DNA of 63,901 nucleotides, filler included, from Octopus bimaculoides (lineage: Eukaryota): assembly GCF_001194135.2 (NCBI RefSeq). It is 7 parts of 7 records of this genome, joined end to end, with 100 filler letters (N's around TTAATTAATTAA, not from the genome) between each part and the next. Parts side by side here need not be neighbours in the genome. Positions count along the whole stretch, not along the records: positions 27,979 to 35,137 come from NC_068990.1; 6 more parts are not named here. The stretch is one strand, 5' to 3'. This document shows, piece after piece, positions 27,357 to 34,895 of the stretch. The position numbers and the translations under genes are program-made. The notes below the pieces were generated by a model. It did no database searches. It had not been told where the DNA came from and saw only the letters and a list, made by a program, of their open reading frames with translations. How positions within the stretch are numbered: position 1 is the stretch's first letter; each line of letters begins with the position of its first letter.

Positions 27357-28341
27357 AACCCTTACCGCATAGCAAATACCAAGCTTTCCTTCTCCCGAGC
27401 ATGTAAATGTGCATTGAGTGATTAATTGTTAATTTTTTTGAAATTATTACCTCTTGTCTTTAGCAGACATTACCATATGCCGTTGTCTTTTAGTTTGCAT
27501 CCTCCTACTAAGAGAGAAATTTCGATTATTTGGGAATAATTTCGTACACAGCATTTCAGTACTCCATCAGGTTTTAGCTGAAGACAAATATGCTGAGCTC
27601 CAGATGAAAGATACAACATGGAAATAAAAGCACACACACACACACAGCAATAAACTACGTCTCTATTAAGAAAAGAAGTAGATCTGAATATAGAATGGAA
27701 AAAAGGAACATATATTTAATATAGTATACAAACAAGCAACGCTACAACACTCAGAATCTCCTGAACGGAATTCAGAGAAGTCTATACTCATAGCTTGCCT
27801 GGAAACTCCGAGTATTGTATGTAAGTGATCTATCTATCTATCTATCTATCTATCTATATATATATATATATATATATANNNNNNNNNNNNNNNNNNNNNN
27901 NNNNNNNNNNNNNNNNNNNNNNTTAATTAATTAANNNNNNNNNNNNNNNNNNNNNNNNNNNNNNNNNNNNNNNNNNNNATGTTTGATCCTTTATATTGAA
28001 CACTCAATATTTCATCTACATTCAATACTTTCTTTCATGGTGCCATCCATTTTTATTTTATTTTATTTTATATTGTATATTGTATATCATATTATATATT
28101 GTATATTCCATATTCTATACCCCACATTAGTTCTGCAGGAATATAAATAAAACATAAAAAACAGAGAGTGTTGGAACTCTTTTAAGCAAAATAATATATT
28201 CCTCTATACACAATCATACAAAAAAACCCACCTTTTTTGTATTTATTTTTACTCGCATATATATATATATATATATATATATGGGAGGAATTGGTATCCA
28301 GAAGACCCAAGGTGGCAGGTAATGCTATGTAAGTGCTATGG

Positions 28342-28384
<43 letters not shown>

Positions 28385-28715
28385 TGGTTGCTTACTGATT
28401 TAAATATTGTAGCTGTTACTAGTGCAGTTGTTATCATTTTATGCTGATACCCGTGTGGAAGTTGAGCTTGTCGTATCAGAAGCAGCGGAGGAATTCATGC
28501 TTTCGCCTTCTGTTGTGGGTTCTACCCACAAGCTCTCAGGTGGCTGTCATCGCCACATATATGACATATAGTTCGTCTGTTCTCCTCTGTGACTTGGATT
28601 TCTACCCTTTTCGGTAGCTGAATTAGTCTTTTCAAAGTATTCTGGTTTCACCTGTAATTGAATACACTCGTTTTATTTCGAACCGATTCTTCCGCCTCTT
28701 GTGGTGGCAGTGGCG

Positions 28716-29000
28716 ATAGTTTGCTTACATTTACTCACTGCTTCGCCTGCTTTATTATCACCATCCAATTCTCCCTTCAGCTAGCTGGCCGTTAAAGGCA
28801 CATTAAAATAACTTTTAGATAACATTAAAATTAATGTTATTCGAAAACAGAACTTTTCAGTATTTCTTCAAATACTTTGCCCTGTAGGGGTAAGAGAGAA
28901 CGGGGCCCAAGTAACTAACGAAGGTTCTGGTTAGTTAAACAAATCGTCCCCAATGATCATAAAAATCACGCACAATACTCCTGTGTGTGTTGCTTGTAAA
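28716..29000 (+). repeat. 285-bp direct repeat, copy 1
   Basis: Identical by eye to 30042-30326. Confidence 0.95.
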
Positions 29001-29049
29001 TTCATTAACAACGGTAATGACATCCACCACAGCTACAGCAACAATAATA

Positions 29050-29390
29050 ATTCTTTCTGCAATAGGCACAAAGCTTTAAATTTTAAGAGAGGGGCTTAGT
29101 CAATTAAAAATTGACCCCAGTACTCAACTGAAGCTTATTTTTTTAACTACGAAATGATGAAAGGCAAAATCGACCCTGAACAAATTTAAAGTCAGATAAC
29201 ATCATCAACAACAAAACAATAATAATCCTTTCTAATAATCCATTGACCCCAGTGTTTACTTAATTTATCGACTCCGAAAGGATAAAAAGCAAAGTCGACC
29301 TCGGCAGAACTGGAACTCAGAACGTAGCGGCAGACGAAATATCGCTAAGCATTTCGCGCGACGTGCTAACGATTTTGCCAGCTCGCCGCC
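29050..29390 (-). mobile_element. SINE family A copies (two partial, tandem)
   Basis: aaagtcgacctcggcagaactggaactcagaacgtag...gccagctcgccgcc. Confidence 0.8.
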
Positions 29391-29422
29391 TTAATAATAG
29401 TGATGATGAAGATGATGATGAC

Positions 29423-29461
<39 letters not shown>

Positions 29462-29619
29462 AAGAAGAATAACAATAAGAATAATACTAATAATAATACT
29501 AATACAAAAACATGGCACTTATCAACCACCGTAATCATAATACCGGCTTGAACTTGTAACTTGTAAGACTTCGAGTCAACTTGGATAAGCACAAAGCAAA
29601 ATCCAAAGAAATAATAACG

Positions 29620-29679
<60 letters not shown>

Positions 29680-29682
<3 letters not shown>

Positions 29683-29965
29683 TCCTGATGCAATACCAAG
29701 CAGTGGTTCATATGGCTTCTTGTCTTAACTGATTGGAAGTGTTATGTACATTGTGTTGTTTTGGTATAAGTCATGGGCGACAGTAAATATTCTGCTCAAT
29801 ACTACACTTTTGCTTATCACTTGTTTGACCTTAACCAGTTGAGCATGTCTCTTGGTGGCTGCCGATATGTGCATCTCTAATCACGAACAGAAGTAGTGGG
29901 GGAGCATCATAGCCCTGTGTTGAGCGGAATTCTTTGGGGTTTGAATAATTCACCTTTGAGACAAG
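29680..29965 (-). mobile_element. Interspersed repeat with a (TTA)n tail, unclassified retroposon 3' end
   Basis: Non-coding block abutting the long (AAT)n at 29615-29680. I recognise it as a high-copy repeat but cannot classify it. Confidence 0.4.
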
Positions 29966-30041
29966 CTTCGGAAAGCCCCGTTTGAAGAACGGTGACCAGA
30001 CCCACTCACCGTTAACGAAACGCTGAAGATGTCTGCGCATC

Positions 30042-30326
30042 ATAGTTTGCTTACATTTACTCACTGCTTCGCCTGCTTTATTATCACCATCCAATTCTCC
30101 CTTCAGCTAGCTGGCCGTTAAAGGCACATTAAAATAACTTTTAGATAACATTAAAATTAATGTTATTCGAAAACAGAACTTTTCAGTATTTCTTCAAATA
30201 CTTTGCCCTGTAGGGGTAAGAGAGAACGGGGCCCAAGTAACTAACGAAGGTTCTGGTTAGTTAAACAAATCGTCCCCAATGATCATAAAAATCACGCACA
30301 ATACTCCTGTGTGTGTTGCTTGTAAA
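30042..30326 (+). repeat. 285-bp direct repeat, copy 2
   Basis: Identical by eye to 28716-29000. Confidence 0.95.
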
Positions 30327-30329
30327 ACG

Positions 30330-30895
30330 GCAGTTGATAGGAGATGTATCGTCTGACGAGCGGAACAGGTCTCTTCCATAGAAAGTAGAAAAGCACGCGC
30401 TCCAACAATATCAGGCATGAAATGAGGCAGGGGACAACTGTCAGGCGGTAGTAGATGATCGAATCGCAGGGACAATTCCACTCTGCCCATTTCTTGGTGA
30501 GATTGGCTACACTGCTCGTCTCCTCCCTTAGTCATTGTTCACCAGGAGGTCTGGAGCAAATAAGACCCTGAGAAATTTAACTGGTCCTTCCGTACAGCGC
30601 CCTGCAACGCTGTTTGTTGGTATGGACCTGCCTCTCCAGGTGTCAAGCTGCAGGCCTACCGACTTCTCCTGGTTGATCTTTGCTACAGTTTTATTAAAGT
30701 GTCTCTGTTGTTGCCGTTGCTGTTGGGGTGCGATGTAGGCTGCAATGTTTTGGGTCAGAAGGCTCTCAGGTGGATTGTGACCTCAGAGATGTCGCGTCTG
30801 GACTTCCTGCCTTCCACAACGACACGCAGTTCCACCCCGTTGGGCAGCTGGATTAGGTCCGGGATCTTCTCGATATTCTGGTTTTACATGGATTA
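30330..30895 (-). mobile_element. Tx1/L1-like LINE ORF1 (gag-like) fragment with a decayed CCHC knuckle
   Basis: IEKIPDLIQLPNGVELRVVVEGRKSR-R-DI-S-EVTI-H-LRAF-*-PK. The CX2CX4HX4C positions read CGC, TCT, CAC, TGA; the three Cys positions are each one substitution from a Cys codon. Confidence 0.55.
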
Positions 30896-30911
30896 ATATT
30901 TCCATTTTGAA

Positions 30912-31000
30912 AGGCGGCGAGCTGGCAGAAACGTTAGCACGCCGGGCGAAATGCTTTGCGGTATTTCGTCTGTCTTTACGTACTGAGTTCAAATTCCACT
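30912..31000 (+). mobile_element. SINE family A head
   Basis: ggcggcgagctggcagaaacgttagcacgccgggcgaaatgc...gagttcaaattcc. Confidence 0.85.
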
Positions 31001-31021
31001 CTCATGCTACAATTCAAATGA

Positions 31022-31280
31022 ATTGGAGCATTAGAAGCAGTTTCCAAGGATTTTGAAAAACATACTAAGAATATTGGAGCTCCTATCAGGTTCGAGGTGA
31101 TCCAGAAGGCAGCAGTCTTCGGTACAGCTCGCATTCTAAGGAGTATTGTCTCTTTGAGTCACAGGAGACGGCACTACTTGAAACTTTGGGAGATTTGTTA
31201 ATGCCTGATTTCAAGTAAAGAATAACCGGTAATTAAGAACTATCTGAGAGTCTTTCCGAATAACAACAGTAATAATAACA
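31022..31280 (+). mobile_element. R4/Dong-like non-LTR element 3' end
   Basis: IGALEAVSKDFEK...IQKAAVFGTARILRSIV (C-terminus of a restriction-like endonuclease), then an AAT-rich tail. Confidence 0.7.
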
Positions 31281-31589
31281 ATCCTTTTATGTTTTGGCGC
31301 AAGGGAGGATTGGTCGACTACATCGACCCCAGTGCTCAATTGGTGCTTTTATATCAACCCCCTAAAGAATGAAATATATATTTTAGCACAAGATCATTTT
31401 GGAGAAATGGCCAAATCGATTGCCCCCCCTACCTACAATGCAAATTCAATATCTCTAACAAATGTATCTTTAAAGTTTTAATTTTTTTTCAGTGCAATTA
31501 AAGCTATTTAGTGTTTGTTAAGTTATGTAGATTTGACGTAATTTATTCTAGTTTACACTTAAATATTTCTTTTTTCTTTGATTTTCAAG

Positions 31590-31725
31590 GAAAGCTTTCA
31601 GGGCGTCTGGAATTTTAATTCCTTTGCTTGGTATAAACTACCTCCTCTTTATTGTAAACCCGGGGTCCACACCAGCTTCAAAAGAAGTGTTCAGCTATAT
31701 CATTGCTTTCCTGCAAGCCACCCAG
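31590..31725 (+). CDS. Exon of a class B1 (secretin-family) GPCR, CRF/DH44-receptor-like: TM6-ECL3-TM7 start
   Basis: ttttctttgattttcaAG acceptor and CAG|GTAAGT donor. One base plus 45 codons, KAFRASGILIPLLGINYLLFIVNPGSTPASKEVFSYIIAFLQATQ, compared with vertebrate CRHR1 [25 protein letters not shown]...FLESFQ (recalled). Confidence 0.93.
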
Positions 31726-31956
31726 GTAAGTGGATATTTGTATTTTAATGCCTCACTTTGTTACCCATCAGTTTATCTGTTTTCTAAAAACTACCCAAGA
31801 TCATTCATGACCGAGTGGGGTCTTGACCATTTGCTCTTTATCCTTTACATACATACACGCATACATACACACATACATACGTACATGCATACACACATAC
31901 ATACATACATACATACATACAAACATACATACATACATACATGCAGACAAACAAAC

Positions 31957-32070
31957 AAAAATACCTTGTTGTTGATGTTGAAATTCCAGTGAAGGAGCCT
32001 TGGATCTAGGTTAGAAACCGGTTCTTTTTCTTTTGGCAAGAAATCTTGAAATAAAACTGAACAATGACAT
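31957..32070 (+). mobile_element. 3' UTR tip of an R4-like element embedded in (TACA)n
   Basis: 114-bp diverged copy of 32521-32634, flanked by TACA repeats on both sides. Confidence 0.7.
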
Positions 32071-32120
32071 ACATACATACATACATACACACATGCATGA
32101 ATACATACTTATATACATAC

Positions 32121-32634
32121 ATAAAGCTGAAGATCAATGAAAAAGTGAATACCTTAGATGAACTATTGAGAAATCTGCCGTTACTATATCCAGATTACAA
32201 GTTCAGGTTTATACCTGTAATTATTGAGGGCTCTAGGATATGTAACACACTGGCTAAACACCAATCTTGAGAAATTAGGCTTCTCAAACCAGAAAGGAGA
32301 AAGCTAATTCAAAGACTACAGATCCAAGCCATCGCTGGAACTGTAAAAAATTGTGAAACTTTCCAAAAGTTTATCATTTAAGTATATATGAGCATATCAT
32401 ATGAGCATGTCTAGATATGCTAGCATATGCATCAGAAGACATACATAAAACAAAACTTACAAATCAGCACGTATGCATACACACACACATACATACATAC
32501 ATACATACATACATACATACAAAAATACCCTGTTGTTCATGTTGAATTTCCAATGAAAGAGCCTTGAATCTAGGTTAGAGACCGGTACTTTCTCTATTGG
32601 CGAGAAATCTTGAAATGAAACTGATTAATGACAT
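32121..32634 (+). mobile_element. 5'-truncated R4/Dong-like element (REL C-terminus plus 3' UTR)
   Basis: IPVII(G)ALGYV...LQIQAIAGTVKNCETFQKFII* with frameshifts; begins in and ends at TACA repeats. Confidence 0.75.
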
Positions 32635-32643
32635 GTATACATA

Positions 32644-32968
32644 CATGATGATGATGGCCGTCCACTCGTGACCGAGGAAGACCATTGCCAACCTTCAGGA
32701 ACATTGTGCGCTCTAGGACTAACTTACATTTTGCATTTACGGCTCCGTTGGTGGCTAATGAGCCCTGCCCTTGATAAGCATACACGACTGCAAACATTGC
32801 AGATTAAGCTTTCCCCATTCGCTATACGAGCCGTGCGCTTTCGCGCAGCTCGCTTACGTTCTTCATGCTGGATACGTGCTCTCTCAAAAGTGTCGATCCC
32901 CTCCTTAACCTGCTTCCGCCATCTGTGGCGATGACAGGCATTGTTCTCCCAGTCAGTTTCCTGCATAT
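32644..32968 (-). mobile_element. RTE/BovB-like LINE 3' end
   Basis: DWENNACHRHRWRKQVKEG...LICNVCSRVCLSRAGLISHQR* (C-terminal Zn-finger-like), ending GGACGGCCATCATCATCAT; 5' part lost in the gap. Confidence 0.85.
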
Positions 32969-33922
32969 NNNNNNNNNNNNNNNNNNNNNNNNNNNNNNNN
33001 NNNNNNNNNNNNNNNNNNNNNNNNNNNNNNNNNNNNNNNNNNNNNNNNNNNNNNNNNNNNNNNNNNNNNNNNNNNNNNNNNNNNNNNNNNNNNNNNNNNN
33101 NNNNNNNNNNNNNNNNNNNNNNNNNNNNNNNNNNNNNNNNNNNNNNNNNNNNNNNNNNNNNNNNNNNNNNNNNNNNNNNNNNNNNNNNNNNNNNNNNNNN
33201 NNNNNNNNNNNNNNNNNNNNNNNNNNNNNNNNNNNNNNNNNNNNNNNNNNNNNNNNNNNNNNNNNNNNNNNNNNNNNNNNNNNNNNNNNNNNNNNNNNNN
33301 NNNNNNNNNNNNNNNNNNNNNNNNNNNNNNNNNNNNNNNNNNNNNNNNNNNNNNNNNNNNNNNNNNNNNNNNNNNNNNNNNNNNNNNNNNNNNNNNNNNN
33401 NNNNNNNNNNNNNNNNNNNNNNNNNNNNNNNNNNNNNNNNNNNNNNNNNNNNNNNNNNNNNNNNNNNNNNNNNNNNNNNNNNNNNNNNNNNNNNNNNNNN
33501 NNNNNNNNNNNNNNNNNNNNNNNNNNNNNNNNNNNNNNNNNNNNNNNNNNNNNNNNNNNNNNNNNNNNNNNNNNNNNNNNNNNNNNNNNNNNNNNNNNNN
33601 NNNNNNNNNNNNNNNNNNNNNNNNNNNNNNNNNNNNNNNNNNNNNNNNNNNNNNNNNNNNNNNNNNNNNNNNNNNNNNNNNNNNNNNNNNNNNNNNNNNN
33701 NNNNNNNNNNNNNNNNNNNNNNNNNNNNNNNNNNNNNNNNNNNNNNNNNNNNNNNNNNNNNNNNNNNNNNNNNNNNNNNNNNNNNNNNNNNNNNNNNNNN
33801 NNNNNNNNNNNNNNATATATACATGTGTGAGTGTGTGCGTGTGTGCGAGCGTGCGTGCGTGTGTGTGTGTGTATGTGTGCGTGTGTGTATGTGTGTTTGT
33901 GTGCATGTGTGTGTGTGTGTGT

Positions 33923-33953
<31 letters not shown>

Positions 33954-34764
33954 CATCTCACACTTCGAAACTGAATGATTAAATTATACAGAATCCAGAA
34001 AACCGTAATTATTGTGAGTAGCCCATCATTGGTGTCTTCTTCGTATCTATTTTCTGTTACTAAATGATGGCATCCGACAAGGTTGAGCGAAGTTCTAATA
34101 ACTAACAAATTGTCGCGGAAAATAAAGCCAGGTGCGTCTATCGAAGTCAGTGAATGTTGGAATAGCATTGAAAACTACAATTCACGGTTCTAGCATACTC
34201 TGCCAACACTAATTATCTAAAGTAGAATTGTATGTATGTATGTATGTATGAGTGTATGAGTATGTGCGTGTGTGAGAGTGTGCGTGAGTGTGAGTGTGTG
34301 TCTGTTTGTGTGTGTGTGTGTGTGTGTGTGTTTGTGTTTGTGTGTGTGTGTGTTTGTGTGTGTATGTGTGTGTGTGTGTGGTGAAGTTTTGTTTTGGTGA
34401 AACAGGTAATAGAATTAATTAAATCATAGTTTGACATTTTAACTCGTACTTTCGAACACTTTCAATTCTTGTGTACAGATGGCTTCCATCATTTTCATAT
34501 CAAGTTCATTTAAAATGTCTGGCATATGGGGAAAAAAATAAAATCCAAAATTTCTTTCATAGCGTTTTTTATACCTATTCTATATATTCGTTTTAAGAAC
34601 GCATTTTACTCTCAGGGGCTTCTTTCATTCGTTACTATTCTTATTCTCGTTTTTCCCAATGCAAATCAAAGTTAGTGGGAAGCATTATAAATTAATATTG
34701 TATAAAATATAACTTCACATTATAAGCCTGAGAAATTCTGCAGAACTTTTATTTTACATTTCAG

Positions 34765-34806
34765 GGTCTATTCCTCGCAATTCTTTATTGCTTCATGAAC
34801 AGCGAT
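34765..34806 (+). CDS. Exon of the same class B1 GPCR: TM7-helix 8 start
   Basis: attttacatttcAG acceptor, 42 nt encoding GLFLAILYCFMNSD, GTAAGT donor. Matches the conserved class B GxxVxxxYCFxNxEV motif and the phase of the preceding exon. Confidence 0.95.
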
Positions 34807-34816
34807 GTAAGTAACC

Positions 34817-34895
<79 letters not shown>

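What the first reader, a model, noticed from the sequence alone, without database searches (positions are those of the whole stretch)
31590..34806. Hidden host gene: CRF/DH44-receptor-like class B GPCR exons
Seen: two exons with canonical splice sites and compatible phases encode (R)KAFRASGILIPLLGINYLLFIVNPG...FLQATQ|GLFLAILYCFMNSD; the ORF track shows only fragments. Established: this is the class B1 TM6-TM7 signature, the exon boundaries mirror CRHR genes as I recall them, and molluscan egg-laying hormone belongs to the CRH/DH44 peptide family. Inference: a candidate ELH/DH44-type neuropeptide receptor. SG in TM6 (TL in CRHR) and QAT before the TM7 QG are atypical and could mark a divergent paralogue.
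Basis: partly seen in the sequence, partly recalled or inferred. Interest (0 to 1): 0.7.

Follow-up and report, generated by a model that had tools for sequence, protein, structure and literature searches.

The report
Annotated octopus CRF-receptor-like gene exons
These are two real, correctly spliced exons (TM6 to TM7) of an octopus hormone receptor of the CRF/DH44 family, but the gene is already in public annotation, so only its unusual divergence and unknown ligand are of interest.

Summary
Exon A (31590-31725) and exon B (34765-34806) have canonical AG/GTAAGT splice sites and compatible phases. Spliced, they give a 59-residue TM6-ECL3-TM7 segment of a class B1 GPCR. The 846-N gap lies wholly inside the intron, and no residue is missing at the junction.

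The gene is not hidden. The 59-mer is identical to residues 366-424 of the public Octopus bimaculoides protein XP_052826981.1 ("corticotropin-releasing factor receptor 2 isoform X1", 499 aa) and to the older model XP_014773411.1. Orthologues are annotated in O. sinensis and O. vulgaris.

The CRHR/DH44R assignment holds on similarity. CRHR1/2 beat calcitonin, VIP/PACAP, PTH, Cluster A/B and PDF receptors by 20-60 bits. NJ bootstrap support is moderate (57%).

The "divergent paralogue" idea is supported. Octopus has three CRHR-like loci, and this one sits on a long branch. It changes residues that are invariant or nearly so in 37 other family members, yet it is under purifying selection (dN/dS 0.10).

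The ELH-ligand inference is weak. Published surveys restrict ELH to gastropods and found no ELH/DH44 precursor in any cephalopod. The 42-nt TM7 exon is also not CRHR-specific, since PTH1R has one and calcitonin-receptor and CRH-R1 isoforms lack the same TM7 segment.

Verdict: a real but already annotated gene, of low to moderate interest.

The parts
27979..31589 (+). 3' part of the upstream intron (repeat-rich; no coding exon of this gene)
   Evidence: tblastn of the full-length orthologue P0001 and of the O. bimaculoides protein P0361 against the piece finds only the two exons. The region holds microsatellites, SINE-like copies and a 285-nt perfect direct repeat.
31590..31725 (+). Exon A: last base of a split Lys codon plus 45 codons, KAFRASGILIPLLGINYLLFIVNPGSTPASKEVFSYIIAFLQATQ (end of ICL3, TM6 with the PLLG kink motif, ECL3, start of TM7)
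   Evidence: AG acceptor at 31588-89 after a poly-Y tract, with an in-frame stop 4 codons upstream of the first full codon. CAG|GTAAGT donor. tblastn with P0361 gives E=7.8e-24. It is 89% identical at nucleotide level to mRNA contig L001 nt 1597-1724.
31726..34764 (+). Intron (3039 nt as assembled), containing the 846-N assembly gap at 32969-33814
   Evidence: GTAAGT...TTTCAG boundaries. The gap was located. Content is (CATA)n/(TG)n microsatellites, a 208-nt repeat pair and a minus-strand ORF remnant abutting the gap. The true length is unknown because the gap size is only estimated.
34765..34806 (+). Exon B: 42-nt phase-0/phase-0 exon, GLFLAILYCFMNSD (core of TM7)
   Evidence: TTTCAG| acceptor and |GTAAGT donor. 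tblastn with P0361 gives 100% identity, E=5.8e-6. In mRNA contig L001 the equivalent sequence follows exon A's equivalent directly and is followed by GTCCATGCC (VHA...), which is absent from the piece.
34807..35137 (+). Start of the downstream intron, opening with a long (ATT)n microsatellite; the next exon (VRAALAKK...) is beyond the piece
   Evidence: Sequence read directly. No tblastn match to residues 425 onward of P0361.

Best explanation
The piece is part of a very large, intron-rich Octopus bimaculoides gene that is already annotated as 'corticotropin-releasing factor receptor 2' (XP_052826981.1, 499 aa). The two exons encode residues 366-424: the cytoplasmic end of TM6, the TM6 P-L-L-G hinge, extracellular loop 3 and most of TM7.

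By homology with solved CRF1R/CRF2R-Gs complexes, this is the segment that kinks outward when a peptide agonist's N-terminus enters the transmembrane core. That movement opens the cytoplasmic pocket for Gs (inferred, not shown here).

The receptor belongs to the bilaterian CRHR/DH44R subfamily. It is the most divergent of three octopus paralogues. It has changed several residues that are otherwise invariant in the subfamily while staying under purifying selection. It is therefore most likely a functional, re-tuned peptide receptor whose ligand is unknown.
For: Shown by tool results:
- Exact identity of the 59-mer to P0361 and P0360.
- Canonical splice sites and compatible phases.
- A related-species mRNA contig joins the two exon equivalents directly.
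- dN/dS = 0.10 over the 59 codons against that mRNA.
- Pfam 7tm_2 match for the fragment. The O. sinensis orthologue P0151 (same 90%-identity cluster as the O. bimaculoides protein) carries HRM plus 7tm_2 domains.
- PDB ranking for the fragment: CRHR1 58.5 bits and CRHR2 55 bits, against CLR 35.5, CALCR 33.8, VIPR2 30.8 and PTH1R 26.
- PDB ranking for the full-length orthologue P0151: CRHR2 260 and CRHR1 249, against PAC1R 199, VIPR1 187 and CALCR 179.
- BLAST of P0151 against named mussel subfamily references: CRHR 263, CALCR-I 203, Cluster B 179, Cluster A 136, PDFR 73.
- In the NJ tree the window type falls inside CRHR/DH44R in 57% of 300 bootstraps. It does not group with the calcitonin/Cluster A, Cluster B/VIPR or PDFR references in the best tree.
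- Three separate O. bimaculoides loci, on contigs of 94.6, 55.6 and 97.8 Mb. The window gene is 36-38% identical to the other two, which are 54% identical to each other.
- PLLG and QG...YCF.N motifs are retained.
Against: - Bootstrap support for placement inside CRHR/DH44R is only moderate, and the lineage has a long stem branch (0.59), so long-branch effects are possible.
- Four positions that are invariant or nearly so in 37 other CRHR/DH44R sequences are changed: GITY to GINY, LQS.QG to LQATQG, CFLN to CFMN, N.E to NSD. TM6 position 6.42 is S where T is commonest, and 6.43 is G.
- No ELH/DH44/CRH-type precursor has been reported in cephalopods (PMC6425005), so the expected ligand class may be absent.
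- No expression or pharmacology data for this gene were examined.
- G-protein coupling and the activation mechanism are inferred from vertebrate homologues only.
Confidence: 0.9

Rival explanations
1. The receptor is the cephalopod ELH/DH44 receptor. On this view it binds a CRH/DH44/ELH-type amidated peptide and takes part in reproductive (optic gland/gonad) control.
For: It belongs to the CRHR/DH44R subfamily by similarity and tree. DH44/ELH receptors form a conserved lophotrochozoan receptor group (PMC8557429). ELH, DH44 and CRH are treated as homologous peptides (PMC6425005).
Against: PMC6425005 reports ELH proper as gastropod-restricted. It found no ELH/DH44 precursor in any cephalopod data set (O. 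bimaculoides genome, cuttlefish CNS, Euprymna genome) and proposes loss in Cephalopoda. Octopus has two more conservative CRHR-like paralogues (P0363 and P0372 types), which would be better candidates for an ancestral ligand. This paralogue has altered invariant TM6/TM7 residues. No functional data exist.
Confidence: 0.2
2. The two exons belong to a decaying or non-functional duplicate (pseudogene), and the long branch reflects relaxed constraint.
For: Long stem branch and replacement of subfamily-invariant residues. Only two exons can be inspected in this piece.
Against: dN/dS is 0.10 against a related-species transcript. Both exons have intact frames and perfect consensus splice sites. Full-length 499-aa open models exist in O. 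bimaculoides and O. sinensis, and a full-length ORF sits on an RNA-derived contig in a third species. The lineage-specific substitutions are shared by all orthologues, so they are old and fixed.
Confidence: 0.03
3. It is a member of another invertebrate class B1 subfamily (calcitonin/DH31-type, Cluster A, Cluster B/PTH-like or PDFR) that only superficially resembles CRHR in TM6-TM7.
For: For the 59-mer alone, mussel CALCR-Ia scores 55.8 bits, close to mussel CRHR at 60.5 bits. NJ support for CRHR/DH44R monophyly including this clade is only 57%.
Against: With the full-length orthologue the margin is large: 263-281 bits to CRHR-type, against 203 (CALCR-I), 179 (Cluster B), 136 (Cluster A) and 73 (PDFR). 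In the PDB, CRHR1/2 beat all others by 50 bits or more. The top 30 or so named database hits are all CRF-receptor-like. In the NJ tree the calcitonin/Cluster A and Cluster B/VIPR references form separate groups.
Confidence: 0.05

Closest known systems
Octopus bimaculoides corticotropin-releasing factor receptor 2 isoform X1 (XP_052826981.1; earlier model XP_014773411.1 / UniProt A0A0L8HCX5)
   Same: Residues 366-424 are identical to the spliced window peptide, and the flanking residues (…QYK | … | VRAALAKK…) fit the splice phases. This is the same gene.
   Different: Nothing in the coding sequence differs. The window shows only 2 of its exons, and the assembly has a gap in the intron between them.
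Octopus sinensis XP_029641147.2 and O. vulgaris CAI9729212/3 'CRF receptor 2-like' (orthologues); unnamed 499-aa ORF on Logan transcript contig SRR3401912_4934
   Same: 57/59 (O. sinensis, O. vulgaris) and 52/59 (Logan) identical in this segment. All share the atypical residues (FRASG, GINY, LQA.QG, CFMNSD).
   Different: Species-level substitutions only. The O. sinensis gene spans about 365 kb.
Vertebrate CRHR1/CRHR2 (solved structures such as 6P9X, 6PB1, 7TRY)
   Same: Gapless 59-residue alignment at about 51% identity. It has the same PLLG hinge, the same ECL3 length including NPG, and the QG...YCF.N TM7 motif. It is the best PDB match full-length.
   Different: Only 33-37% identity full-length. 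Position 6.42 is T in CRHR and S here; 6.43 is L there and G here. GITY becomes GINY, LES/LQS.QG becomes LQATQG, and NSE becomes NSD. The ligand is unknown.
The other two octopus CRHR-like paralogues (XP_014771477.1 type; XP_014778785.1 type) and the single mollusc 'CRHR' of Cardoso et al. 2020 (e.g. Mytilus Mga.CRHR)
   Same: Same subfamily, with HRM plus 7tm_2 architecture and 36-41% identity.
   Different: Those keep the subfamily-invariant residues and sit on short branches. The window gene is on a long branch (0.59) whose position within the family is unresolved.
Insect DH44 receptors (DH44-R1/R2)
   Same: Same bilaterian subfamily; 31-33% identity, about 205 bits.
   Different: More distant than mollusc or vertebrate CRHRs. 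Insects have a known DH44 ligand, whereas none is known for cephalopods.

Membership tests
Class B1 (secretin-family) GPCR, Pfam PF00002 7tm_2 | Significant match to the 7tm_2 profile above the gathering score | tested here: met
   The fragment scores 29.5 bits against a cut-off of 20.6, E=5.7e-7, at profile positions 203-249 of 250. The orthologous full-length proteins carry PF00002.
Class B1 (secretin-family) GPCR, Pfam PF00002 7tm_2 | TM6 P-x-x-G hinge and TM7 Q-G-x-x-V/L...Y-C-F-x-N motif | tested here: met
   PLLG at residues 11-14 and QG...YCF.N at residues 45-57. All are at columns that are invariant in 37 relatives.
Class B1 (secretin-family) GPCR, Pfam PF00002 7tm_2 | N-terminal hormone-receptor (HRM) extracellular domain | tested here: met
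   The HRM domain is not in the window. PF02793 is recorded for the O. sinensis orthologue P0151 and for P0001. P0151 shares a 90%-identity cluster with the O. bimaculoides protein that contains the window peptide.
CRHR/DH44R subfamily | Closest similarity to CRHR/DH44R rather than to other B1 subfamilies | tested here: met
   PDB, fragment: CRHR1 58.5 bits against the next family at 35.5. PDB, full length: 260 against 199. Named mussel references: CRHR 263, against CALCR 203, Cluster B 179, Cluster A 136 and PDFR 73.
CRHR/DH44R subfamily | Phylogenetic placement inside the CRHR/DH44R clade | tested here: inconclusive
   NJ tree with Kimura distances, 378 columns, 51 sequences. The clade including the window type is recovered in 57% of 300 bootstraps (a further 26% if one odd Haliotis sequence is included). 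The lineage is a long branch (0.59). No ML or Bayesian analysis was possible.
CRHR/DH44R subfamily | Subfamily-invariant TM6/TM7 residues (GITY Thr, LQS.QG Ser, CFLN Leu, N.E Glu) | tested here: not met
   The window has N, A, M and D at positions where 37/37, 36/37, 36/37 and 37/37 other members have T, S, L and E. These are empirical conservation features, not a formal definition of the family.
CRHR/DH44R subfamily | Activation by a CRH/DH44/ELH-type peptide | not testable with these tools
   No pharmacology is available. The literature reports no ELH/DH44 precursor in cephalopods (PMC6425005).
CRHR/DH44R subfamily | CRHR-like exon boundaries in TM6-TM7 | tested here: inconclusive
   The boundaries match the ...FQ|GFFVSVFYCFLNSE|V... 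positions when aligned to CRHR1. A 42-bp TM7 exon is documented for PTH1R, and calcitonin-receptor and CRH-R1d isoforms lack the same TM7 segment (PMC3179322). The feature is therefore not subfamily-specific. The human CRHR1 exon coordinates themselves were recalled from memory, not checked.
Calcitonin/DH31 receptors | Closest similarity to, or clade with, CALCR/CLR/DH31R | tested here: not met
   They score 20-60 bits below CRHR. The calcitonin-type references form their own group with Cluster A in the NJ tree.
PDF receptors | Closest similarity to PDFR | tested here: not met
   Mussel PDFR scores 23.9 bits against the fragment and 73 bits against the full-length orthologue, the lowest of all references.
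PTH / glucagon / secretin-like (invertebrate Cluster B) | Closest similarity to, or clade with, Cluster B/PTHR/VIPR | tested here: not met
   Cluster B 179 bits, VIPR1 176, PTH1R about 166, against CRHR 240-281. They form a separate group in the tree.

The most novel reading that the evidence does not exclude
This fast-evolving third CRHR-family paralogue may be a cephalopod (possibly octopod)-specific receptor that has been re-tuned to a ligand other than a canonical DH44/ELH/CRH peptide. Alternatively it may bind a DH44-like peptide so divergent that surveys have missed it. Either would explain why cephalopods keep three CRHR-like receptors although no ELH/DH44 precursor has been found in them.
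Probability: 0.25. Interest if true: 0.5.

Novelty: already known. Interest (0 to 1): 0.2.

Why it matters
As a gene discovery it does not matter. The exons are in RefSeq and UniProt models for O. bimaculoides, and orthologues are annotated in O. sinensis and O. vulgaris.

Two side points have modest value. First, octopus has three CRHR/DH44R-like loci, whereas a published survey counted a single CRHR-like gene in molluscs (PMC7200681). Second, these receptors persist, one of them strongly diverged but constrained, in a lineage where the cognate ELH/DH44 peptide family is reported as lost (PMC6425005). That receptor-without-ligand mismatch can be tested directly by deorphanisation. It bears on how neuroendocrine systems were rewired in cephalopods.

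Tried and rejected
- The search for homologous proteins with the 59-mer returned 'no homologue'. This was a false negative of the word index. Exact matches exist in the same collection.
- I searched the rest of the piece for further exons, by tblastn with the full-length P0001 and P0361 and by reading the six-frame translations. There are none.
- Fetching the O. sinensis genomic locus to fill the gap failed because the gene spans about 365 kb and no DNA was returned.
- Rfam and tRNA scans of the piece found nothing.
- Pfam on four intronic ORF fragments gave only a sub-threshold C2H2 zinc-finger hit.
- The first Biopython NJ run timed out and was redone with numpy distances.
- A literature search for a deorphanised ELH receptor returned only noise.
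- The cephalopod GPCR-expansion paper (PMC6408891) does not discuss this subfamily.
- I considered and rejected pseudogene, calcitonin/DH31R, PDFR and Cluster A/B membership (see the rival explanations).
Full report
**1. What is in the sequence**

Only 27979-35137 of the window is genome. On the + strand there are two short coding exons.

- Exon A is 31590-31725 (136 nt). A polypyrimidine tract and the AG at 31588-89 precede it, and an in-frame stop lies four codons upstream of its first full codon. Its first base completes a split codon, and 45 codons follow. It ends CAG|GTAAGT in phase 0.
- Exon B is 34765-34806 (42 nt, 14 codons), bounded by TTTCAG| and |GTAAGT.
My first coordinate guess was off by one base and was corrected.

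**2. The assembly gap**

The only N run in the piece is 32969-33814 (846 N). It lies inside the 3039-nt intron, 1243 nt downstream of exon A and 950 nt upstream of exon B. Frame continuity across it is therefore irrelevant.

The relevant question is whether a coding exon could be hidden in the gap. It is not. Human CRHR1 aligns to the 59-mer without a gap. An RNA-derived contig from a related cephalopod (L001, Logan SRR3401912, 2075 nt with an uninterrupted 1500-nt ORF) runs from the exon-A equivalent straight into the exon-B equivalent and then into VHAALAKK. The public O. bimaculoides proteins contain the 59-mer contiguously.

What cannot be checked here is the true intron length and whether the scaffold join is physically correct. 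The order and strand of the two exons are as the gene requires.

**3. Is it more than chance?**

Yes.
- Pfam 7tm_2: 29.5 bits (cut-off 20.6), E=5.7e-7, on the last 47 positions of the profile.
- PDB: CRHR1 at E=3.8e-15.
- 1.84 billion representatives: best hit E=3.4e-25, 88% identity.
- tblastn of full-length relatives against the piece hits only these two intervals (E=7.8e-24 and 5.8e-6 with P0361). Everything else is noise.
- So the piece carries exactly two exons of the gene. The preceding exon (...LRRTEESLQYK) lies more than 3.6 kb upstream, and the next exon (VRAALAKK...) lies beyond 35137.

**4. Identity of the gene**

A full-length relative (P0001) led to the O. sinensis protein XP_029641147.2, 'corticotropin-releasing factor receptor 2-like' (P0151; 57/59 identical). 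Its 90%-identity cluster contains three further sets of entries:
- O. bimaculoides XP_052826981.1 (499 aa, isoform X1);
- O. bimaculoides XP_052826982.1 / XP_014773411.1 / UniProt A0A0L8HCX5 (391 aa);
- two O. vulgaris entries.

The window 59-mer is an exact substring of both O. bimaculoides proteins, at residues 366-424 and 258-316. It is flanked by ...ESLQYK and VRAALAKKVR.

So the window is O. bimaculoides, or something indistinguishable from it in this segment. The split codon encodes Lys, not Arg. The initial 'no homologue' result was a false negative of the word index. The O. sinensis orthologue spans about 365 kb, which explains why a 7-kb piece shows only two small exons among repeats.

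**5. Which class B1 subfamily?**

- Fragment against the PDB: CRHR1 58.5 and CRHR2 55 bits. Then CLR 35.5, CALCR 33.8, VIPR2 30.8 and PTH1R 26.
- Full-length orthologue against the PDB: CRHR2 260 and CRHR1 249. Then PAC1R 199, VIPR1 187 and CALCR 179.
- Against named references taken from the supplement of Cardoso et al. 2020 (PMC7200681) plus named database proteins, P0151 scores:
  - 281 and 266 with the two other octopus CRHR-like proteins;
  - 263 with mussel CRHR;
  - 240 and 237 with vertebrate CRHR2 and CRHR1;
  - 206 with an insect DH44-R1;
  - 203 with mussel CALCR-Ia;
  - 179 with Cluster B;
  - 136 with Cluster A;
  - 73 with PDFR.
- An NJ tree (51 sequences, 378 columns, 300 bootstraps) puts the window-type clade inside CRHR/DH44R. 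That grouping is recovered in 57% of replicates, and in a further 26% if one odd Haliotis sequence is included. The calcitonin/Cluster A and Cluster B/VIPR references form separate groups.

Tree support is only moderate, and I could not run ML or Bayesian methods.

**6. A divergent paralogue**

O. bimaculoides has three CRHR-like loci on different large contigs:
- the window gene (contig of 94.6 Mb);
- XP_014771477.1 (55.6 Mb);
- the XP_014778784-87 / XP_052826176-77 set (97.8 Mb).

The last two are 54% identical to each other. The window gene is only 36-38% identical to either.

In the tree the two conservative paralogues, together with unnamed transcript-derived relatives (probably cephalopod), form a clade supported at 98.7%. 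The window type sits on a long stem branch (0.59) whose position within the family is unresolved.

I compared it with 37 other CRHR/DH44R sequences. The window type replaces residues that are invariant or nearly so:
- GITY becomes GINY (T in 37/37);
- LQS.QG becomes LQATQG (S in 36/37);
- CFLN becomes CFMN (L in 36/37);
- N.EV becomes NSDV (E in 37/37);
- the 'TL' of KATL becomes 'SG'.

In class B numbering the last change is T6.42→S and L6.43→G. That numbering, and T6.42's role in the conserved polar HETx network, come from my own knowledge and not from a tool.

These changes are shared by the O. sinensis, O. vulgaris and Logan orthologues, so they are old. dN/dS against the Logan transcript is 0.10 over the 59 codons (17 synonymous and 8 non-synonymous differences). 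This indicates constraint, not decay.

**7. Exon structure argument**

The boundaries coincide with ...FQ|GFFVSVFYCFLNSE|V... in the CRHR1 alignment. However, an in-frame 42-bp exon encoding TM7 is documented for PTH1R (exon 14). A 14-residue TM7 deletion is known for a calcitonin-receptor isoform (the Δe13 transcript), and CRH-R1d also carries a deletion in TM7 (PMC3179322). I read the exon as a class-B1-wide feature, so it does not discriminate CRHR from the others. By analogy, skipping of exon B would yield a TM7-less isoform. That is speculation.

**8. Ligand and function**

The receptor segment encoded here is the TM6 hinge, ECL3 and TM7. By homology with CRF1R/CRF2R-Gs structures, I infer peptide-induced TM6 kinking at PLLG and Gs coupling.

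The specific ELH idea is weak for a cephalopod. De Oliveira et al. 2019 conclude that ELH is a gastropod-restricted DH44 homologue. They retrieved no ELH/DH44 sequences from any cephalopod resource, including the O. bimaculoides genome, cuttlefish CNS transcriptomes and the Euprymna genome, and they suggest loss in Cephalopoda (PMC6425005).

Thiel et al. 2021 list DH44/ELH receptors as a conserved lophotrochozoan group (PMC8557429). I found no paper reporting deorphanisation of a mollusc ELH/DH44 receptor.

So all three octopus receptors appear to be orphans as far as I could find. The window gene, as the most altered, is the least likely of the three to keep the ancestral ligand.

**9. Verdict**

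The family assignment and the splicing are correct, and the 'divergent paralogue' idea is supported. 'Hidden gene' is wrong because the gene is already annotated. The exon-boundary argument is non-specific, and the ELH-ligand inference is not supported for cephalopods. Novelty: already known. Residual interest lies in the mismatch between three receptors and no known ligand, and in the accelerated but constrained evolution of this paralogue.

Noticed in passing
window 28716-29000 and 30042-30326: A 285-nt direct repeat, 100% identical, with 1326 nt start-to-start spacing in the upstream intron. It could be a very young short mobile element, LTR-like ends or an assembly duplication. The flanks differ on both sides.
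   Followed up: no
window 29307-29392 and 30911-30996: An 86-nt inverted pair, 86% complementary, containing 'gcgagctggca...gttagcacg...cgaaatgct...tatttcgtct...'. It looks like two oppositely oriented copies of a short interspersed repeat. ARAGORN and Rfam find no tRNA or known RNA in the piece.
   Followed up: partly
window 31875-32082 and 32439-32646: A 208-nt direct repeat pair (81% identical) inside the exon A-B intron. Each copy combines a (CATA)n microsatellite with a unique-looking segment ('...ttgaaattccagtgaaggagccttggatctaggttagaaaccgg...'). This is probably another interspersed repeat family.
   Followed up: no
window 32724-32968, minus strand (runs into the N gap): An open frame abutting the gap ends ...LICNVCSRVCLSRAGLISHQRSRKCKM*. 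It gives a sub-threshold C2H2 zinc-finger hit (zf-met, 20.0 bits against a cut-off of 21.2). It is possibly the C-terminus of a transposable-element protein whose remainder lies in the unread gap.
   Followed up: partly
window 34819-34893; also 29405-29460, 29621-29683, 33830-33950, 34230-34385, 28263-28380: Dense microsatellites: a (ATT)n run of about 25 units starting 12 nt after exon B's donor site, plus (GAT)n, (AAT)n, (TG)n/(GTGC)n, (TA)n and (CA)n. The gap is flanked on its right by (TG)n, a plausible cause of the assembly break.
   Followed up: no
protein collection: the search for homologous proteins reported that no candidate shared three 5-residue words with the 59-mer. Yet proteins containing the 59-mer exactly are in that collection, as non-representative members of a 90% cluster whose representative differs at 2 residues. 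Negative results from that tool with short queries should not be trusted.
   Followed up: yes
O. bimaculoides proteins P0361, P0363, P0372: There are three CRHR-like loci in Octopus (also seen in O. sinensis and O. vulgaris, and one in Argonauta). Cardoso et al. 2020 stated that molluscs have a unique CRHR-like gene. In the NJ tree the two conservative copies, together with unnamed transcript-derived relatives, form a well-supported clade (98.7%).
   Followed up: partly
database proteins P0186 (Patiria miniata) and P0221 (Haliotis asinina): Automatic names look misleading. The Patiria 'PTH/PTHrP receptor-like' protein clusters with deuterostome CRHRs in the NJ tree. The Haliotis 'CRF receptor 2-like isoform X1' scores slightly better against mussel calcitonin-type receptor (226 bits) than against CRHR (216-218) and falls outside the CRHR clade.
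   Followed up: partly
O. sinensis locus of P0151: The orthologous gene spans about 365 kb for a 499-aa product, so introns average tens of kilobases. This explains why the exons appear isolated among repeats in a 7-kb piece.
   Followed up: no
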